Assembly: GCF_006345805.1 (NCBI RefSeq)
Contig: NC_042997.1
Coordinates: 104,842,001-104,906,000 of the forward strand
Reading direction: 5' to 3'
Source: Octopus sinensis
Taxonomy: Eukaryota
Length of the DNA stretch: 64,000 bases
In this document: one piece after another, positions 8,494 to 54,979 of the stretch
How positions within the stretch are numbered: the first letter of the stretch is position 1
How the letters are laid out: the number at the start of each line of letters is the position of its first letter
Notes under the pieces: generated by a model
What the model was told of the DNA's origin: nothing
Databases searched by the model: none
What the model saw: the letters and a program-made list of their open reading frames with translations, nothing else
Program-made: the position numbers and the translations under genes

Positions 8494-8649
8494 GAGTGGC
8501 TGTGTAGTAAGTAGCTTGCTTACGAACCACATGGTGCCGGGTTCGGTCCCACTGCGTGGCACCTTGGGCAAGTGTTTTCTACTATAACCTCTGGCCGATC
8601 AAAGCCTTGTGAGTGGATTTGGTAGACGGAAACTGAAAGAAGCCAATCG

Positions 8650-8711
<62 letters not shown>

Positions 8712-8913
8712 CCTGTGTTTCTCCCCTAACATCGCCTGAAAACCTATGCTGGTTTGTTTACGTCCCCGTAACTTAGCGGTTCGGCAAAAGAGACAAATAG
8801 AATAAGTACTAGGCTTACAAAGAATAAGTCCTGGGGTCGATTTTCTCGACTAACGGCGCTGCTCCAGCATGGCCACAGTCAAATGACTGAAACAAGTAAA
8901 GAGAGTAAAAGAG
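8494..8913 (+). mobile_element. tRNA-derived SINE family B, near full length, with internal (TA)n(TG)n
   Basis: Head GTGGCTGTGTAG...GGTTCGGTCCC, CACCTTGGGCAAGTG block, GGAAACTGAAAGAAGCC, internal microsatellite, 3' end CAGTCAAATGACTGAAACAAGTAAA. Confidence 0.9.
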
Positions 8914-9800
8914 TATAACACATCCACAACATTAACTTAGTATGTAGGGAAAGAGTAAAGACATCAAAACGATGAACAAGCATAATTAGAACCGCCCACA
9001 GGCACTCAATTTGACCACACACATCACACACACACATCGACCACCAACAAAACGAAAGAAAGAAAAATACTAAAAGTGAAACATCAACCGGATATGAGAA
9101 AGATACAATTAATTGCTGCAGAATACCCTCCCTCGCCGCCGCCGCCACCACCGCTGCCATAACTACACATATGCCGCACACACAATAACATTACATTCAT
9201 GTTCATATATATATATATATATATATGTAAATTGAGAATGTACATAGTCATTGCACTAAGTTCCATCATACCAATTTTCAGCACGACTAAAATTTAGCTA
9301 TGAAGTTTTAGTCGAGGCGGAAAGTGGTAACGCAAAAACTCTACGTCTTTAAAAGAACCTTCCCTAGATAAGATAGCGTAGACTAAATGCGTTTAACAAC
9401 ATAAAAACATTAACTATGTGACATTGATGATGTCTACACGATAAACTACGTCTAACGCAAAATTCTAAATGCATAAAAGTGTATAAAATTTGAGTCCTTG
9501 ATTGTGGTAATTATCTGTATGTTTTCTATTAATTCTTCTGTCCTCGCGTTTGAATATATGTATATTAACTTTTTCGGGTCCCAAAGAATGTGTGAACATG
9601 TATACTTGCAACTCACCAGAAGAAGAAAACATAATCGTAAAAACTACTACTCCTATTCACGCTGAACAAATATGAAAGCCACATAGACAAATGTAAGTAG
9701 CAGCAGCTCCCCAAAATCCTCAATAGTCGCAGAATTGTGAAAATCAACACTACTTAAAAAAACATTCGCAGAACTATATATATATATATGTTTATATATA

Positions 9801-10184: not shown

Positions 10185-10358
10185 TTACCTCCCTCTTCCC
10201 TTCTTGGGATCTTTCCTTTTCCTATGTTTCTGACGAAGAGCTCCGCTCGAAACGTTAATCCCTCCTTCTTTCCTTACTTCCTGAGCGTCCAATAATACTA
10301 TATTTGTTCCACGTCCACGTGTTGTATTTTCTTTTTGTGTTTTCATGTTTGGATTAAC
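10185..10358 (+). mobile_element. Short solo Penelope-pLTR-like element carrying a hammerhead motif
   Basis: Contains CTGACGA-A-GAGC-TCC-GCTC-GAAA-CGTT and ends in (TA)n; same layout as the pLTRs at 49207 and 51237. Confidence 0.6.
10225..10260 (+). ncRNA. Minimal type-I hammerhead ribozyme motif, canonical CUGANGA core, weak stem I
   Basis: Core 10230-10236, 4-bp stem II, GAAA 10249-10252, palindromic ACGU helix III, predicted GUU cleavage triplet; stem I only 2 bp. Confidence 0.55.
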
Positions 10359-40866: not shown

Positions 40867-41034
40867 CCACTACACATTCTTTATTTTCTCTCCTTGTTTC
40901 TTTCTGTGTTGCTTTCTGTGGGAGAGCGTAGGCTCGAAACGTTAAATACTTTTTCACTTCCCGGCGTTAAACTAATACATCTGTTTGTTTTCCTCACCAC
41001 CTGTCTTCGTCTTTTGTTTTTGTAAATTCTCCCT
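40867..41034 (+). mobile_element. Solo pLTR-like element in (TA)n with degenerate hammerhead motif
   Basis: CTGTGGG-A-GAGC-GTAG-GCTC-GAAA-CGTT-AAA at 40916-40946. The 3' part CTAATACA..TTTGTTTTCC..CCACCTG.CTTCGTCTTTTGTTT matches the reverse complement of 49211-49278. Confidence 0.75.
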
Positions 41035-45514: not shown

Positions 45515-45658
45515 TTTGATACACAGAATTTGTTTCTGTCAAAGTGCGTAGGCTCGAAACATAAAATACTTTCATGTTATTCCCGAGCGTTACATTAATA
45601 CACCGTGTTGTTCTTCCTACACTCATCTTCGTCTTTGTTTTTTCTATAAATTTGAACT
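45515..45658 (+). mobile_element. Decayed solo pLTR-like element with eroded hammerhead motif
   Basis: CTGTCAA-A-GTGC-GTAG-GCTC-GAAA-CATA-AAA at 45536-45566, followed by the same downstream block, ending at (CA)n. Confidence 0.65.
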
Positions 45659-49036: not shown

Positions 49037-49180
49037 GGCGCAGGAGTGGCTCTTTGGTAAGTAGCTTGCTTGCCAACCATATGGTCCCGAATTCAGTACC
49101 ACTGCGTGGCATCCTGGGCAAGTGTCTTCTAGTATAGCCGCGAGCCGGATTTGGTAGACGGAAACTGAAAGAAGCCTGTC

Positions 49181-49190
<10 letters not shown>
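49037..49190 (+). mobile_element. 5' half of a family B SINE split by the Penelope-like element; preceded by an older family B head (48940-49036)
   Basis: GGCGCAGGAGTGGC...GGAAACTGAAAGAAGCCTGTCG then (TA)n; the 3' half resumes at 51814. Confidence 0.88.
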
Positions 49191-49206
<16 letters not shown>

Positions 49207-49212
<6 letters not shown>

Positions 49213-49580
49213 CGGGAAGCTTTATGAAAATAAACAAAAGACGAAGGCAGGTGGAAAACAAACGAACAATTGTATTAGTATGGCGCTCAGGAAATATAAA
49301 TAAAAGAAGTCTTTAACGTTTCGAGCCTACGCTCTTCAACAGAAAGATACACAGAGAGAGAAAAACACAGAAAGAAGGAGAGATAAAAAATGCGTGCAGT
49401 AGCTAACGAATCAACATGGCGATCTGATTTCGGCCAGAGGTCAAAGATCAAACATGAGACGCGAGAGAGAAATAAGGGGAGATAATAGGGCTGATAAAAT
49501 GGTTGAGGGACCAGCTAAAAGTGCGTGGGAGGGGTCTGCATGTGTGTATGTATAGGGTTGGTGTATGTATTAGTATGTAT

Positions 49581-49629
<49 letters not shown>

Positions 49630-49777
49630 AGAGAGTATTAGTGCGTAAGATTGGTCTGGACGTGCGTATGTATGGGGTTGGTGTATGTATTAGTATGTAT
49701 TAGTACGTATTGGTATGTATAGGTATGTGTGTGTGTGTGTGAGAGAGTATAAGTGCGTATGCGGGGTCTGGACGTGT
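49207..49777 (-). repeat. 3' pseudo-LTR (about 570 bp)
   Basis: Near-identical to 51237-51813: about 8-9 point differences plus microsatellite indels, counted by eye. Confidence 0.95.
49310..49347 (-). ncRNA. Minimal hammerhead ribozyme motif in the 3' pLTR (A6U core variant)
   Basis: UCUUU-CUGUUGA-A-GAGC-GUAG-GCUC-GAA-ACGU-U-AAAGA: 5-bp stem I, 4-bp stem II, palindromic helix III; same strand as the RT. Confidence 0.7.
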
Positions 49778-49894
49778 GTATGTATAGGGTTGGTGTAAGT
49801 ATTAGTATGTACTAGTATGTATTAGTACGTATTAGTATGTATTAGTTGGTGTGTGTATTAGTATGGCACATCATATGTGATGTGATGTGTAAAG

Positions 49895-51237
49895 TCATGT
49901 GGTGTAGTGAGGAGAAGAGGGGGAGGGGGAGAAGAGGGGTTGGGAGGTAGGGTCAGGGAAGGAGCTATGGACCAAAAGGTCTCGAAGGTTGTGGGCTCGT
50001 TTGAAAGAGGGGAGGGGTCGGTTAGGGAAGAGGTGTGAAGTGGACGGGTCGGACTGGAGATGACGGAAAGCTCGAAGAATGGTGCGTTGGAGACGTAGGG
50101 TCGTGGGGTGGTAAGTGAGGGGAAAAGGGAGGCGGGAGACAACAGGGCGGGTTCGGGGAGAGAGAGCAGATACACGGTCCACGGACCGTGCTCTGGCAAG
50201 GGCGGTGTGGATAGTGGTGAGGGGGTATCCACGTAGGGTGAAGTGGTGAGCCATACGTTGAGACTGAGTCTCAAAGTCATGGTCGTCACTACAGAGCCTA
50301 CGTAGACGGAGGAATTGGGAATAGGGGATGGAAAGCTTGGTGTGTTCTGGGTGGGAGGAAGAGAAGTTGAGGTATGAGTGTGAGTCTGTGTGTTTGTAGT
50401 GAATGGAGGTGGTAAGAGTGGAGTGAAGAATGCTAACCGAAATGTCGAGGAAGGAGACAGAGGTTTTGGAGATAGTGGAAGTGAAGTGGAGGGCTGGATG
50501 GAAAGATTGGACGAAAGAGAGGAAGGAATCTAGATGTTCGCGGGAGTGAGGTGGCACCGATAATGTCGTCAATATAACGACCATATAGTTCAGGAGTGGG
50601 ACCAGTGAAATTAGAGAATATTTGGGCCTCAACATAGCCAACGAACAGGTTCGCATAGTTGGGGCCCATTCGCGTTCCCATGGCCACTCCTGAGACCTGA
50701 TGGTAGAACTCGCCCGCGAACGAGAAGCAGTTCAGAGTAAGGACAAGTTCGGCCAGACGAATGAGTGTGGAGGTGTCAGGTACAGGGTTAGAGCGGAGGT
50801 CAAGAAAGTGTCGAAGGGCCTGTAGTCCTTCGTGGTGAGGGATAACAGTATAGAGGCTTTGGATGTCCATAGTAAAAAGGATTTTGGAGGAGCCGGGAGG
50901 AAAGGAGAAAGAGTTGAAAAGCCGGAGAGCATGGTTGGTATCGTGGATGTGGGAGGGAAGAGATGCCACTAGGGGGGGCAAGGACACGGTCGAGGTATTT
51001 AGAGATGAGCTCCGTGGGGCAGTTACAGGCGGAGACGATGGGGCGGCCAGGGTTGTTGGGTTTGTGGATTTTGGGGAGGAAGTAAATGGTGGGGGTACGT
51101 GGGGTTCGCACAATTAGGTTGGATGCGGTGCGGGGGAGACGGGAGGACGAGATGAGGTCTTGGACGGTAGAGGATACCGTCTGTTGGTAGCTACATGTGG
51201 GGTTAGAGGGCAGAGGGGAATAGAAGGAGGTGTTACA
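49895..51237 (-). pseudogene. Penelope-like (Neptune-type) reverse transcriptase with two frameshifts (G7 run 50972-50978 and ~50555)
   Basis: YFLPKIHK, PGRPIVS, TMDIQSLYTVIPH, QVSGVAMGTRMGPNYANLF, RYIDD, FLDI, SSHPEH..SIPYSQFLRLRRLCS, RGYP, NLRDLLVHS. No in-frame stop seen in the stitched reading until after NLRD. Confidence 0.95.
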
Positions 51238-51812
51238 TATAACGGGAAGCTTTATGAAAATAAACAAAAGACGAAGGCAGGTGGAAAACAAACGAACAAT
51301 TGTATTAGTATGGCGCTCAGGAAATATAAATAAAACAAGTCTTTAACGTTTCGAGCCTACGCTCTTCAACAGAAAGATACACAGAGAGAGAAAAACACAG
51401 AAAGAAGGAGAGAAAAAAAATGCGTGCAGTAGCTAACGAATCAACATGGCGATCTGATTTCGGCCAGAGGTCAAAGATCAAACATGAGACGCGAGAGCGA
51501 AATAAGGGGAGATAATAGGGTTGATAAAAGGGTTGAGGGACCAGCTAAAAGTGCGTGGGAGGGTCTGGATGTGTGTATGTATAGGGTTGGTGTATGTATT
51601 AGTATGTATAAGGGTGTGTGGTGTGTGTGTGTGTGTGTGTGTATGAGAGAGTATTAGTGCGCAAGATTGGTCTGGACATGCGTATGTATGGGGTTGGTGT
51701 ATGTATTAGTATGTATTAGTATGTATTAGTATGTATTAGTACGTATTGGTATGTATAGGTATGTGTGTGTGTGTGTGAGAGAGTATAAGTGCGTATGCGG
51801 GGTCTGGACGTG

Positions 51813-51813
<1 letters not shown>
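51237..51813 (-). repeat. 5' pseudo-LTR (about 577 bp)
   Basis: Direct repeat of 49207-49777. Confidence 0.95.
51340..51377 (-). ncRNA. Minimal hammerhead ribozyme motif in the 5' pLTR (A6U core variant)
   Basis: Identical to 49310-49347. Confidence 0.7.
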
Positions 51814-51873
<60 letters not shown>

Positions 51874-52071
51874 CTGTGATTTTCCTCACCATTGCTTGAC
51901 AACCGATGTTTTGGTATTTACGTCCCTGTAACTTAGCGGTTCGGCAAAAGAGACCGATAGAATAAGTAGTAGGCTTACAAAGAATAAGTCCTGGGTTCGA
52001 TTTGTTCGACAAAAGGCGATGCTCCAGCATGGCCGCCGTCAAATGACTGAAATAAATAAAAGAATAAAAGA
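51814..52071 (+). mobile_element. 3' half of the family B SINE split by the Penelope-like element
   Basis: (TA)n(TG)n, then GCTTGACAACCGATG...GGTTCGGCAAAAGAGACCGATAG...GTCAAATGACTGAAA. Confidence 0.88.
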
Positions 52072-52088
52072 ATATATATATGTGTATA

Positions 52089-52247: not shown

Positions 52248-53004
52248 CCCCGCATGATGAATTAGTTCCGTCAATGAAATAGAGCAACAAAATTATGATG
52301 CCAAAGTTACTGGCATCTTCCTGAAACCGCTACAAAATATGAGCGTACAGGTTTTATCTGAGGACAAATCGTTGCGAAAGCATTTTTGGTTCATTGTTGA
52401 GTCACAGTCAGATGTGATTGGTAGGGTATGCTAAGTGGGAGGATGTCGGACGACTCTCAAACGACTCTTTAAACCGCACTTGAATTCGGAGAGAGTTAAT
52501 AACATTAAAAAAAATCTCAATACTACATAAAATACCAGCTAAAAGTTTTATAAAAAAGATATATAAGATTTCGATACGGAAAAAGCAGGAGATAAACTGA
52601 AATGGTAAACAATATTCTGTGATGAAGGTATACAATGTGTTTGAGAACGGTCGGATTTAATCTAGACGAACTCATATGTAGTTTGCTAATTCCGAAGCTA
52701 ATTCCGAAATTGACTCGATGTCTAAAAAACTTATAATGTAGAAAGTAAGAAAAGTAAGAAAACTTTGAATGTAAGGTCAACCCATAAAATCTCAGTAACA
52801 CTTATATGTCTCCAAAACACTACGTGTGCAATGTACACCGAAGTATGTAAGTTCAAGTTTGAGGTACAAAGACATATGATAGTACATTAAAATGCCGTTC
52901 AATGGATAGCTCCAATACATGCTACAGAGATTTCCTAAGCCACTTCAAAGCACCATACCCGTATGGCAGTCACCAGGTATTGACTGCATAGTAAATAATT
53001 GTGA

Positions 53005-53154
53005 CTGTGTTGTAAGTAGCTTGCTTACCAAGTACATGGTTCCGTGTTCAGCCCCACTGCGTGGCACCATGGGCAAACGTTCTCTGGTATAGCCTCAGGT
53101 CGACCAAAGTCTTGTGAGTGGATATGATAGACGGAAACTGAAAGAAGCCTGTTG

Positions 53155-53160
<6 letters not shown>
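53005..53160 (+). mobile_element. 5' half of a family B SINE; matching 3' half at ~54250-54450
   Basis: GTAAGTAGCTTGCTTACCAA...GGAAACTGAAAGAAGCC followed by microsatellite. Confidence 0.8.
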
Positions 53161-53232
<72 letters not shown>

Positions 53233-53241
53233 GTGTGTGTA

Positions 53242-54016
53242 CAGGGGTTGGTCAAAATAATGGAAACACCTTAAAATTTTAAACAAATTTCTTTTAATAT
53301 GGGGTAGGACCGCCATTGGTAGTAATTACAGCTTGAATTCTACAAGGTATCGACTCGTGCGAAGTTTGAATTGTTTCCAAAGGAAGTTTTTGCTATTCTT
53401 CGGCTAAAACAGTCTCCAGTCCTTGTAGTGATGATGGTGGAGGATATCGACTACTTGTTTTTCTAAAATGCACCATAAATGTTCAATAATATTGCAGGCC
53501 TCCTGCGAAATCTGGCTTTGTCCAACTCCTGGCGAATAGTTTTGTGAAAACTGGGTTGTCGAGGTGGTCATTAAGCTCTGCAGTAATTTTTGGAGCTATA
53601 CTTTTGTGATCCTTTCTAACAATTCGCGTAAGAGTCCTATTTGAAAGTTTTGGTTTTCTTCCGGAGTTTTGATTCGACAAGGCGGTTTTACCCTCCTTCT
53701 TAAAGGCTGTCATTATTTTCGAGACAGTACTTCTTAATACAGAAAACGTTTTCGCAGTTTCATTACGTTAACACCTGCCATACGAGCACGACAATTTGAC
53801 CTCTTTGAAAGTCCGATAGATCTGTCATTTTAATGAATTTTAATTTCCTTTTACTGATGATATCTGGAAAGAAACAGCAATTTAGCAAAGCGTATTAAGC
53901 AACACTAATAATAAATCACAACACATAAAAATTAACAAGCTCTTGACGGTTTTATAGATATTTCAAAATCATGATGCTATGATGCTAGGTGTTTCCTTCA
54001 TTTTGTCAAACCCCTA
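53242..54016 (-). mobile_element. Internally deleted Tc1-like element, 775 bp, both TIRs and TA TSD
   Basis: CAGGGGTTGGTCAAAATAATGGAAACACC and GGTGTTTCCTTCATTTTGTCAAACCCCT(A). N-terminal HTH joined at ~53491 to C-terminal IEHLW...IQAVITTNGGPTPY*; most of the DDE core is missing. Confidence 0.92.
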
Positions 54017-54185: not shown

Positions 54186-54249
<64 letters not shown>

Positions 54250-54979
54250 TGTGTTTGTCCCTGCACCATCGCTTGACAACCTATGTTGGTGTGTCTTCGT
54301 TCCCGTAACTTAACGGTTTCGCAAAAGAGATCTATAAAATAAGTACTAGGTTTACAAAGGATAAGGTCTGGGATCGATTACTTCATCTATAGGCGGTACC
54401 CCAGTATGGCCGCAGTCAAATGACTGAAACAAATAAAAGAGTAAAAGAGTAAGACAATCAAGACACCTTCCTTCTGACGCAGAGAAATAGTGTTTATCAA
54501 AATGAGATAAGATATATTTTGTACAAAAACTGAACCCTTGAAACTAAAGGAAAACTCTAGTTCACTGTGGTTGCGCAGTTTTCAGTGGTAATCGCCTTCT
54601 TGAACTGAGATGAACTCGCATAATTAACTGTAGTAACATCGATTACAGTGACAATGATATGATGGAAGCCATCTGACTATATTGTATTTTGACAAGTCTG
54701 AAATCCTGTAAATAATCATGTCTCTCCCTCGCTATTACTCTCTCTTCCTCTGTGTTCTCCCTCTCACTTAGCATATGCACCGCGAACTCAATGAATTGTG
54801 TATATGGACACATACACTCACATACAGAAATACATACATACATACATGCATACATACATACATACATACATACATACATACATACATACATACATACATA
54901 CATGCATACATACATACATACATATATACATACATACATACATACATACATACATACATACATACATGCATACATACAT

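What the first reader, a model, noticed from the sequence alone, without database searches (positions are those of the whole stretch)
49207..51813. Young Penelope-like element with RT but no GIY-YIG endonuclease, bounded by hammerhead pLTRs
Seen: the RT is well preserved (two 1-nt frameshifts, no stops) through thumb and NLRDLLVHS, then ends after ~20 Ser/Pro-rich residues. The Cys-rich linker and GIY-YIG domain are absent in all minus frames; instead there are TATTAGTATG/(TG)n subrepeats leading into the pLTR. The RT starts abruptly at the 5' pLTR (5' truncation). Established: Neptune/Poseidon-type PLEs have a C-terminal GIY-YIG; endonuclease-less PLEs (Athena, Coprina) are known mainly as telomere-associated. 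Inference: either an endonuclease-free, ribozyme-processed PLE family that primes on (TA)n microsatellites or breaks at internal sites, possibly seeding new simple repeats, or a deletion derivative mobilised in trans. Best candidate here for an undescribed system.
Basis: partly seen in the sequence, partly recalled or inferred. Interest (0 to 1): 0.82.

Follow-up and report, generated by a model that had tools for sequence, protein, structure and literature searches.

The report
Dead, truncated Penelope-like retroelement copy
This is a broken copy of an ordinary endonuclease-type Penelope-like retrotransposon that has lost both ends of its gene and sits in a (TA)n tract inside a SINE; nothing here shows a new endonuclease-free mobile element.

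Summary
A 1.3-kb RT remnant with two 1-nt frameshifts and no stops lies between two 98.5%-identical direct repeats. Each repeat consists of CATACTAATA/(CA)n subrepeats plus a 324-nt core. No GIY-YIG or Cys-rich linker occurs anywhere in the 64-kb window. The "hammerhead" gets no Rfam hit. It does fit the published PLE minimal hammerhead, except for U instead of A at core position 6.

The headline interpretation is not supported. [quoted passage not shown] This copy aligns only to residues 187-612 of a 759-aa relative, so it also lacks the N-terminal domain. Paralogous empty SINE copies show that the composite sits exactly in a (TA)n tract, the known target of linker-bearing endonuclease PLEs. 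Five more solo 3' modules in the window also end in simple-sequence repeats.

Best reading: a 5'-truncated, endonuclease-deleted partial-tandem insertion made in trans by an endonuclease-bearing relative. Secondary endonuclease loss and non-autonomous PLE derivatives are already described. Whether other copies share the deletion junction could not be tested, because no same-family sequence is in any accessible collection.

The parts
49044..49181 (+). Left half of the host SINE-like repeat (tRNA-like part ending ...GGAAACTGAAAGAAGCCTGTCG)
   Evidence: blastn and alignment to uninterrupted copies at 8494-8917 and 10181-9794
49182..49206 (.). (TA)n of the SINE's internal microsatellite. This is the target-site flank at the element's 3' end.
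   Evidence: TRF (TA)15 at 49182-49211; empty-site alignment
49207..49530 (-). 3' pLTR core (324 nt), ending ...AAGCTTCCCGTTATAT. This is the 3' terminus of the unit and the presumed reverse-transcription start.
   Evidence: Direct repeat D4, 98%; alignment A1. All seven 3' modules in the window stop at the same relative position.
49310..49347 (-). Minimal hammerhead-like motif (A6U variant) in the 3' pLTR
   Evidence: Read from the sequence; features compared with PMC4209133; box enrichment; no Rfam hit
49531..49894 (-). Subrepeat region between the ORF stop and the pLTR core: about 110-nt units built of (CATACTAATA)n, (CA)n and GTCCAGACC blocks
   Evidence: the repeat finder D1/D3/D5; TRF periods 10, 2 and 112
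49895..49936 (-). Non-homologous ORF tail LFSPSPSSPHYTT plus the TGA stop. The deletion breakpoint lies at its upstream edge.
   Evidence: The HMM of relatives aligns only up to ...TSQP; protein alignment A4
49937..51236 (-). RT remnant (fingers, palm with YIDD, thumb, up to NLRDLLVHS). It equals residues 187-612 of the 759-aa relative P0003. Frameshifts lie near 50975 (+1) and 50545 (-1).
51237..51560 (-). 5' pLTR core, the 3' part of an upstream 5'-truncated partial copy
51340..51377 (-). Minimal hammerhead-like motif (identical A6U variant) in the 5' pLTR
51561..51813 (-). Subrepeats of the upstream partial copy, 5'-truncated inside a subrepeat unit
   Evidence: Alignment A1; blastn
51814..51871 (.). 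(TA)n(TG)n, the rest of the SINE's internal microsatellite and the flank at the element's 5' end
   Evidence: TRF; empty-site alignment
51872..52076 (+). Right half of the host SINE-like repeat
   Evidence: blastn 83-86% to 8664-8917, 54191-54451 and 10007-9794

Best explanation
The locus is one insertion of a canonical C-terminal-endonuclease PLE of Neptune-like type, meaning the RT-EN linker of its relatives has the CX2-5CxxC motif. The insertion has the usual partial-tandem (pseudo-LTR) layout.

Shown:
- The composite (49207-51813) interrupts the (TA)n part of the internal (TA)n(TG)n microsatellite of a SINE-like repeat.
- It consists of a 5'-truncated partial unit (subrepeats plus pLTR core) joined head-to-tail to a second unit.
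- The second unit's ORF begins at residue ~187 and ends 18 residues into the EN linker.
- Both units end at the same nucleotide (...CCCGTTATAT).
- The copy has no start codon, no N-terminal domain and no endonuclease.

Inferred mechanism:
- An RT-EN protein from an intact relative, acting in trans, nicked the (TA)n tract.
- It started reverse transcription at the fixed site about 110 nt downstream of the hammerhead-like motif and copied the 3' module, the subrepeats and the RT region.
- It stopped early (5' truncation) and jumped to the 3' end of a second RNA, creating the upstream pLTR.

The missing endonuclease is a secondary internal deletion of about 135 codons or more. I lean about 60:40 towards a deletion already present in the RNA template or made by template switching during cDNA synthesis, which would make this a non-autonomous derivative. 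The alternative is a genomic deletion after insertion. The hammerhead-like motif is a family heirloom that may be catalytically weak (A6U). It is not needed to explain the structure.
For: - Relatives. The best 120 homologs are PLE ORFs. Those complete at the C-terminus carry about 146 further residues containing GTFxCxRxRCxTCPF ... NVIYCIxC..LYIGETGRRL, with Pfam GIY-YIG hits. Truncated relatives stop at scattered positions, not at a shared one.
- Collinearity. The element aligns to residues 187-612 of P0003 and 132-562 of P0004. Homology runs into the linker start and then stops.
- Empty site. The joined flanks align contiguously to SINE copies at 8494-8917 and 10181-9794, and the insertion falls in their (TA)n.
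- Literature. PMC8557442 reports that Neptune/Nematis have the CX2-5CxxC linker, with (TA)n as the preferred target tied to the linker. It also reports frequent 5' truncation, partial tandems forming pLTRs, that 'EN losses are not unusual' (Neptune-like MjPLE01), and non-autonomous derivatives sharing 3' ends. PMC11167929 reports that a PLE RT initiates at a fixed internal site downstream of the HHR and that the EN prefers AT-rich DNA.
- Solo modules. Five further solo 3' modules in the window (about 74% identical) stop at the same relative position and abut (TA)n, (CA)n or (CT)n-type repeats. This shows that this 3' module is what gets mobilised.
- Full-length relative. A full-length relative forms tandem arrays with a homologous HHR-like box between ORFs.
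- Age. The two repeats differ by K2P 0.0145, which fits a single recent event.
Against: - No other copy of this exact family could be retrieved, so the timing of the EN deletion and the existence of an intact EN+ master in the same genome are inferred, not shown.
- No GIY-YIG-encoding PLE occurs in the 64-kb window, so the trans-acting source is hypothetical.
- The RT remnant is unusually clean (no stops, only two homopolymer indels). That would also fit a recently active RT-only lineage.
- Assignment to 'Neptune' rests on the linker motif of relatives about 60% identical, not on a phylogeny with named references.
Confidence: 0.8

Rival explanations
1. A genuinely endonuclease-free, self-sufficient PLE lineage. 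Its RT would prime on pre-existing 3'-OH ends in (TA)n microsatellites or at breaks, with hammerhead processing of tandem transcripts.
For: No EN in any frame of the window. The RT remnant has no stop codons. Hammerhead-like motifs lie in both pLTRs. There is a literature precedent for EN- lineages arising inside EN+ clades (MjPLE01, PLE-X; PMC8557442).
Against: This copy also lacks the N-terminal 186 aa and any ATG, so it encodes no functional protein. RT homology continues into the EN linker before breaking, the mark of a deletion rather than a native terminus. (TA)n targeting is what EN+ linker-bearing PLEs do. There are no telomeric repeats. The HHR core carries A6U in both copies. Among relatives, the C-termini that lack EN are scattered decay products.
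Confidence: 0.04
2. The EN region was lost by an ordinary genomic deletion after a full RT-EN (but 5'-truncated) copy had inserted. That would be a private lesion of this locus.
For: The breakpoint lies inside coding sequence with no obvious functional logic. The region downstream is slippage-prone simple sequence, which favours replication-slippage deletions. The two repeat units already differ by three simple-repeat indels.
Against: The insertion is recent (K2P 0.0145), leaving little time for a deletion of at least 0.4 kb. Deletion derivatives and 3'-module-only copies are clearly being mobilised in this genome. This cannot be decided without other copies or an orthologous locus.
Confidence: 0.3
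3. A Naiad-type PLE whose GIY-YIG is N-terminal and was removed by 5' truncation, so the absence of a C-terminal EN would be native.
For: Craig et al. 2021 describe exactly this trap for 5'-truncated PLEs lacking a C-terminal EN, and Naiads occur in Octopus spp. and target (TA)n.
Against: The nearest relatives all have a C-terminal EN and an EN-free N-terminus with ADKGG, whereas Naiads have DKA. There is no extra roughly 20-aa insertion (IFD) between RT motifs A and B relative to canonical relatives. The ORF carries the NLRDxLV entry into the C-terminal linker. A hammerhead-like motif is present, whereas Naiads lack canonical HHRs.
Confidence: 0.01

Closest known systems
Neptune-type (CX2-5CxxC-linker) C-terminal-EN Penelope-like elements
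   Same: RT sequence is about 60% identical to such ORFs. It enters the linker through the same NLRDxLV motif. It also shares the pLTR partial-tandem layout, 5' truncation, a minimal hammerhead-like motif in the pLTR and insertion into (TA)n.
   Different: This copy has lost the linker, the GIY-YIG and the N-terminal roughly 186 aa. A minisatellite of about 360 nt lies between the ORF and the pLTR core. Clade assignment is by linker motif of relatives only, not by phylogeny.
MjPLE01 (Neptune-like EN- PLE of kuruma shrimp) and Chlamys PLE-X. These are secondary EN loss inside EN+ clades, as cited in PMC8557442.
   Same: An RT of EN+ ancestry without an endonuclease, at internal genomic sites.
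   Different: Those are described as families. Here only one copy is seen, and it is also N-terminally truncated and frameshifted. I did not read the primary MjPLE01 paper.
Athena/Coprina EN- PLEs
   Same: No endonuclease; a hammerhead motif next to the 3' end.
   Different: Those are deep EN- clades that attach to telomeric overhangs through reverse-complement telomeric repeats. Here there are no telomeric repeats, the site is the interior of a SINE, and the RT is nested in the EN+ group.
Solo min-HHR modules, non-LTR retrozymes and non-autonomous PLE derivatives (PMC4209133; bioRxiv 10.64898/2026.07.22.740005; MRC1-like Chlamys derivatives in PMC8557442)
   Same: Elements that keep the PLE 3' module with its hammerhead and are copied by PLE machinery in trans. 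Five such solo modules lie in this window.
   Different: This copy still carries 1.3 kb of RT coding sequence. The solo modules here are dispersed single copies, not tandem retrozyme arrays.

Membership tests
Penelope-like elements (general) | PLE-type reverse transcriptase | tested here: met
   RVT_1 at 9.5e-09. There are 933 homologs at E<=1e-10. The best are ORFs combining RT, HTH_animal and GIY-YIG, at 56-62% identity over 96% of the query.
Penelope-like elements (general) | Partial-tandem insertion giving direct pseudo-LTRs, with 5' truncation | tested here: met
   Direct repeats of about 580 nt, 98.5% identical. The upstream unit is truncated in the subrepeats and the ORF starts at residue ~187.
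Penelope-like elements (general) | Hammerhead ribozyme motif in the pLTR | tested here: inconclusive
   No Rfam hammerhead hit even at E<=10. By inspection the motif fits the published min-HHR descriptor apart from A6U. One paralogous module (10230-10253) has the canonical CUGACGA core. Cleavage was not tested.
Canonical C-terminal EN+ PLE (Neptune/Nematis type) | C-terminal GIY-YIG endonuclease preceded by the CX2-5CxxC linker | tested here: not met
   Absent from this copy and from the whole window. Present in its closest relatives. The copy therefore descends from this type but is not an intact member.
Canonical C-terminal EN+ PLE (Neptune/Nematis type) | Insertion preference for (TA)n | tested here: met
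   Empty-site comparison places the insertion in (TA)n. Three of the five solo modules (40885, 56054, 10223) also abut (TA)n; 45533 abuts (CA)n and 21527 a (CTGT)n/(CT)n tract.
Canonical C-terminal EN+ PLE (Neptune/Nematis type) | N-terminal conserved domain with the DKG motif | tested here: not met
   The region is missing. Relatives have ADKGG about 30 aa upstream of the point where this copy begins. The N-terminal HMM finds nothing in the window.
Athena/Coprina (telomere-attached EN- PLEs) | Reverse-complement telomeric repeats next to the HHR, and a terminal location | tested here: not met
   No (CCCTAA)2 even with one mismatch in the window. The insertion lies inside a SINE with flanks on both sides.
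Naiad/Chlamys (N-terminal EN PLEs) | N-terminal GIY-YIG with CxC motif, DKA, an IFD between RT motifs A and B, and no canonical HHR | tested here: not met
   There is no IFD-length insertion relative to canonical relatives. Relatives carry DKG and a C-terminal EN, and a hammerhead-like motif is present. The N-terminus of this copy itself is not available.

The most novel reading that the evidence does not exclude
The RT / Ser-Pro tail / subrepeat / pLTR architecture is the consensus of a recently active cephalopod PLE lineage that has dispensed with its own endonuclease. It would spread at (TA)n tracts either by borrowing an EN in trans as an RT-encoding semi-autonomous parasite, or by using nicks and breaks in unstable microsatellites. 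The amplified ACTAATACA box of the subrepeats would act as extra RT-binding or priming sites.
Probability: 0.08. Interest if true: 0.5.

Novelty: new member of a known kind. Interest (0 to 1): 0.15.

Why it matters
As it stands, the locus matters little. It is a textbook example of PLE insertion anatomy: 5' truncation, a template jump giving a pLTR, and a (TA)n target, proven here by paralogous empty sites. It is useful for annotating cephalopod repeats.

It also illustrates how a doubly truncated copy can mimic an 'EN-less' element. If the same junction proved to be family-wide, it would add an animal example of secondary EN loss inside an EN+ clade. That has a precedent in MjPLE01, so even then it would be an increment rather than a new class.

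Tried and rejected
- Rfam scans of the window at gathering score, and of the locus at E<=10, gave no hammerhead. The only hits were (TA)n/(TG)n artefacts to miRNA models.
- A look-up of the exact 253-aa ORF in public assemblies found nothing on record.
- A second protein search with the last 130 aa, meant to surface short same-family fragments and the junction, gave no hit. An exact scan of metagenome contigs for the 20-nt hammerhead box gave 0 hits. The family-level test was therefore impossible.
- MAFFT aligned the tail 'PSSPHYTT' to the EN motif 'PVSRHFN', which looked like an EN remnant. A profile search of all three frames downstream of NLRD, with stops masked, did not support it, so I rejected it.
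- The Craig et al. 2021 supplement, which would have given named reference sequences for a phylogeny, is not held.
- Minimum-free-energy folding of the 56-nt motif as monomer and dimer recovers helices I and II but also pairs core nucleotides, so it is uninformative for so small a motif.
- No inverted 5'-truncated copy and no 30-40-bp 'tail' could be recognised at either end.

Full report
**Observation**

Read on the minus strand, the region 49207-51813 is laid out as follows:
- (TA)n(TG)n flank, 51871-51814
- partial unit: subrepeats 51813-51561 plus a 324-nt core 51560-51237
- RT coding remnant, 51236-49937
- 13 unrelated codons and a TGA, 49936-49895
- subrepeats, 49894-49531
- second core, 49530-49207
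- (TA)n flank, 49206-49182

The RT joins across three frames into 447 aa with no stop. The shifts are a +1 in a C7 run near 50975 and a -1 next to a C3 run near 50545. Pfam RVT_1 matches at 9.5e-09. The two repeat units differ by 8 substitutions in 557 aligned nt (K2P 0.0145) plus three simple-repeat indels.

**What the RT is**

A search of 5.8 billion proteins gave 933 hits at E<=1e-10. The best are 56-62% identical over about 96% of the query. The relatives that are complete continue for about 146 residues past the point where this ORF stops. That extension contains GTFxCxRxRCxTCPF (a CX4CxxC linker) followed by NVIYCIxC..LYIGETGRRL..REH, a GIY-YIG endonuclease. Pfam GIY-YIG hits support this at 2e-05 to 1.5e-03.

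tblastn of full-length relatives against the window hits only this locus. It covers only residues 187-612 of the 759-aa P0003 and 132-562 of the 705-aa P0004. The copy therefore lacks both the N-terminal roughly 186 aa (including the ADKGG region) and the C-terminal roughly 147 aa.

A profile built from 51 relatives aligns to ...NLRDLLVHSSFPDPTSQP and no further, in any frame. The same profile and an N-terminal profile find nothing significant in the six-frame translation of the whole 64 kb. The absence of EN is real. However, the ORF runs into the first 18 residues of the EN linker before breaking, which is what a deletion looks like, not a native terminus. Relatives lacking EN in the database stop at scattered positions, so there is no sign of a conserved EN-less sister clade.

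**Insertion site**

The two flanks are the two halves of a roughly 430-nt SINE-like repeat with an internal (TA)n(TG)n microsatellite. Joined in silico, they align contiguously to uninterrupted copies at 8494-8917 and 10181-9794, and the PLE composite falls in the (TA)n part.

Craig et al. 2021 (PMC8557442) state four relevant points:
- Neptune and Nematis PLEs carry the CX2-5CxxC linker.
- (TA)n is the preferred target and is associated with that linker.
- PLE insertions are highly 5'-truncated and often form partial tandems that create pLTRs.

There are no telomeric repeats in the window. That excludes an Athena/Coprina-like mode.

**The pLTR and the hammerhead**

Rfam finds no hammerhead, even at E<=10. 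By inspection, each core contains UCUUU / CUGUUGA / A / GAGC-GUAG-GCUC / GAAAC / GU / U / AAAGA.

This reproduces the features Cervera & De la Pena (PMC4209133) list for PLE minimal hammerheads:
- a G10.1-C11.1 pair
- palindromic positions 15.2-16.2
- no helix III
- a 4-5-bp helix I

The exception is that core position 6 is U rather than A.

The roughly 135-nt 3' module containing this motif occurs seven times in the window: two in this element and five solo copies at 40901-41030, 56060-55928, 45521-45653, 10217-10347 and 21527-21410. The box GCTCGAAAC occurs 6 times against 0.17 expected. Only the 10230 copy has a canonical CUGACGA core.

Every module ends at the same relative position and abuts (TA)n, (CA)n or a similar simple repeat. 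This matches the biochemical finding that a PLE RT initiates at a fixed internal site downstream of the hammerhead, after the EN nicks AT-rich DNA, and that ribozyme cleavage is dispensable in vitro (PMC11167929).

A full-length relative (L001, which encodes P0004) lies in a tandem array. Between its ORFs it carries the homologous box CUCCGACGAAGGGCCAAGGCUCGAAACGUC, again with one core deviation.

**Mechanism**

Shown:
- one composite insertion in a (TA)n tract
- two units ending at the identical nucleotide
- the ORF truncated at both ends
- no start codon

Inferred:
- An RT-EN protein from an intact relative nicked the (TA)n tract.
- It initiated cDNA synthesis at ...CCCGTTATAT and copied the 3' module, the subrepeats and the RT region.
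- It terminated early at codon ~187 and jumped to the 3' end of a second RNA, giving the upstream pLTR.

The loss of EN is secondary. It arose either in the template RNA or during cDNA synthesis (a non-autonomous derivative, which I favour at about 60:40), or by a later genomic deletion.

Three points favour the first option:
- The insertion is young, about 2 My if the JC 0.09 = 25 My calibration of PMC13282606 applies.
- 3'-module-only copies are evidently mobilised in this genome.
- Non-autonomous PLE derivatives are known.

This remains unproven.

**Rivals**

An autonomous EN-free lineage is very unlikely for this copy, because it lacks the N-terminal domain and an ATG, it breaks inside the linker, and it uses the EN-type target. 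As a property of an unseen family consensus it cannot be excluded; I put it at about 4-8%.

A 5'-truncated Naiad is rejected. The relatives have DKG and a C-terminal EN, there is no IFD-length insertion, and a hammerhead-like motif is present.

**Limits**

No same-family sequence exists in the accessible collections. The exact ORF is not on record, the C-terminal 130 aa give no hit, and a scan of metagenome contigs (the only DNA collection scanned) for the hammerhead box gave none. Clade naming rests on the linker motif of relatives, not on a tree.

**Verdict**

This is an accurately observed but ordinary, dead, doubly truncated PLE copy. It is a new member of a known kind and of low interest.

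Noticed in passing
window 40901-41030 (+), 56060-55928 (-), 45521-45653 (+), 10217-10347 (+), 21527-21410 (-): Five solo copies of the ~135-nt PLE 3' module (hammerhead-like box plus tail), about 74% identical to the finding's pLTR. Each ends at the same relative position next to (TA)n, (CA)n or (CT)n-type repeats. Only the 10230-10253 copy has a canonical CUGACGA core. Three of the five solo modules carry U at core position 6, like the finding's pLTRs; the 21527 copy is too degenerate to score.
   Followed up: partly
window 8494-8917 (+), 10181-9794 (-), 53001-53240 with 54186-54451 (+), 56356-56154 (-), 49044-49181 with 51872-52076 (+): A ~430-nt SINE-like repeat with an internal (TA)n(TG)n microsatellite occurs at least five times. 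Its microsatellite acts as an insertion sink: one PLE composite, one solo PLE module (56100-55925) and a DNA transposon are found in it or beside it.
   Followed up: partly
window 53240-54015: An internally deleted Tc1/mariner-like element lies at the microsatellite of another SINE copy. Its terminal inverted repeats are ACAGGGGTTGGTCAAAATAATGGAAACACC and its near-perfect complement, it is flanked by TA, and it carries transposase HTH ORF fragments at 53404-53713 (-).
   Followed up: partly
window 49278-49291 and 49850-49863 (-), and the 10-nt subrepeats 49683-49728, 49795-49846, 51699-51764: The 14-mer GCCATACTAATACA in the pLTR core, conserved as ACTAATACA in all solo modules, recurs at the start of the subrepeat region. 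It is the unit of the 10-nt subrepeat. The subrepeats therefore look like an amplification of a conserved 3'-module box. Its function, for example as a protein-binding or priming site, is unknown.
   Followed up: no
L001 3062-3092 (ENA ERZ26696836 contig, tandem full-length PLEs): A relative only ~60% identical in protein keeps the box GGCTCGAAACGT in its inter-ORF region, within a hammerhead-like motif that has C instead of U at core position 4. Single core deviations may therefore be common in this PLE group.
   Followed up: no
window ~50975 and ~50545: Both RT frameshifts sit in or beside homopolymer C runs (C7 and C3). They could be assembly or sequencing errors rather than mutations, in which case the RT fragment would be an uninterrupted 447-codon reading frame.
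   Followed up: no
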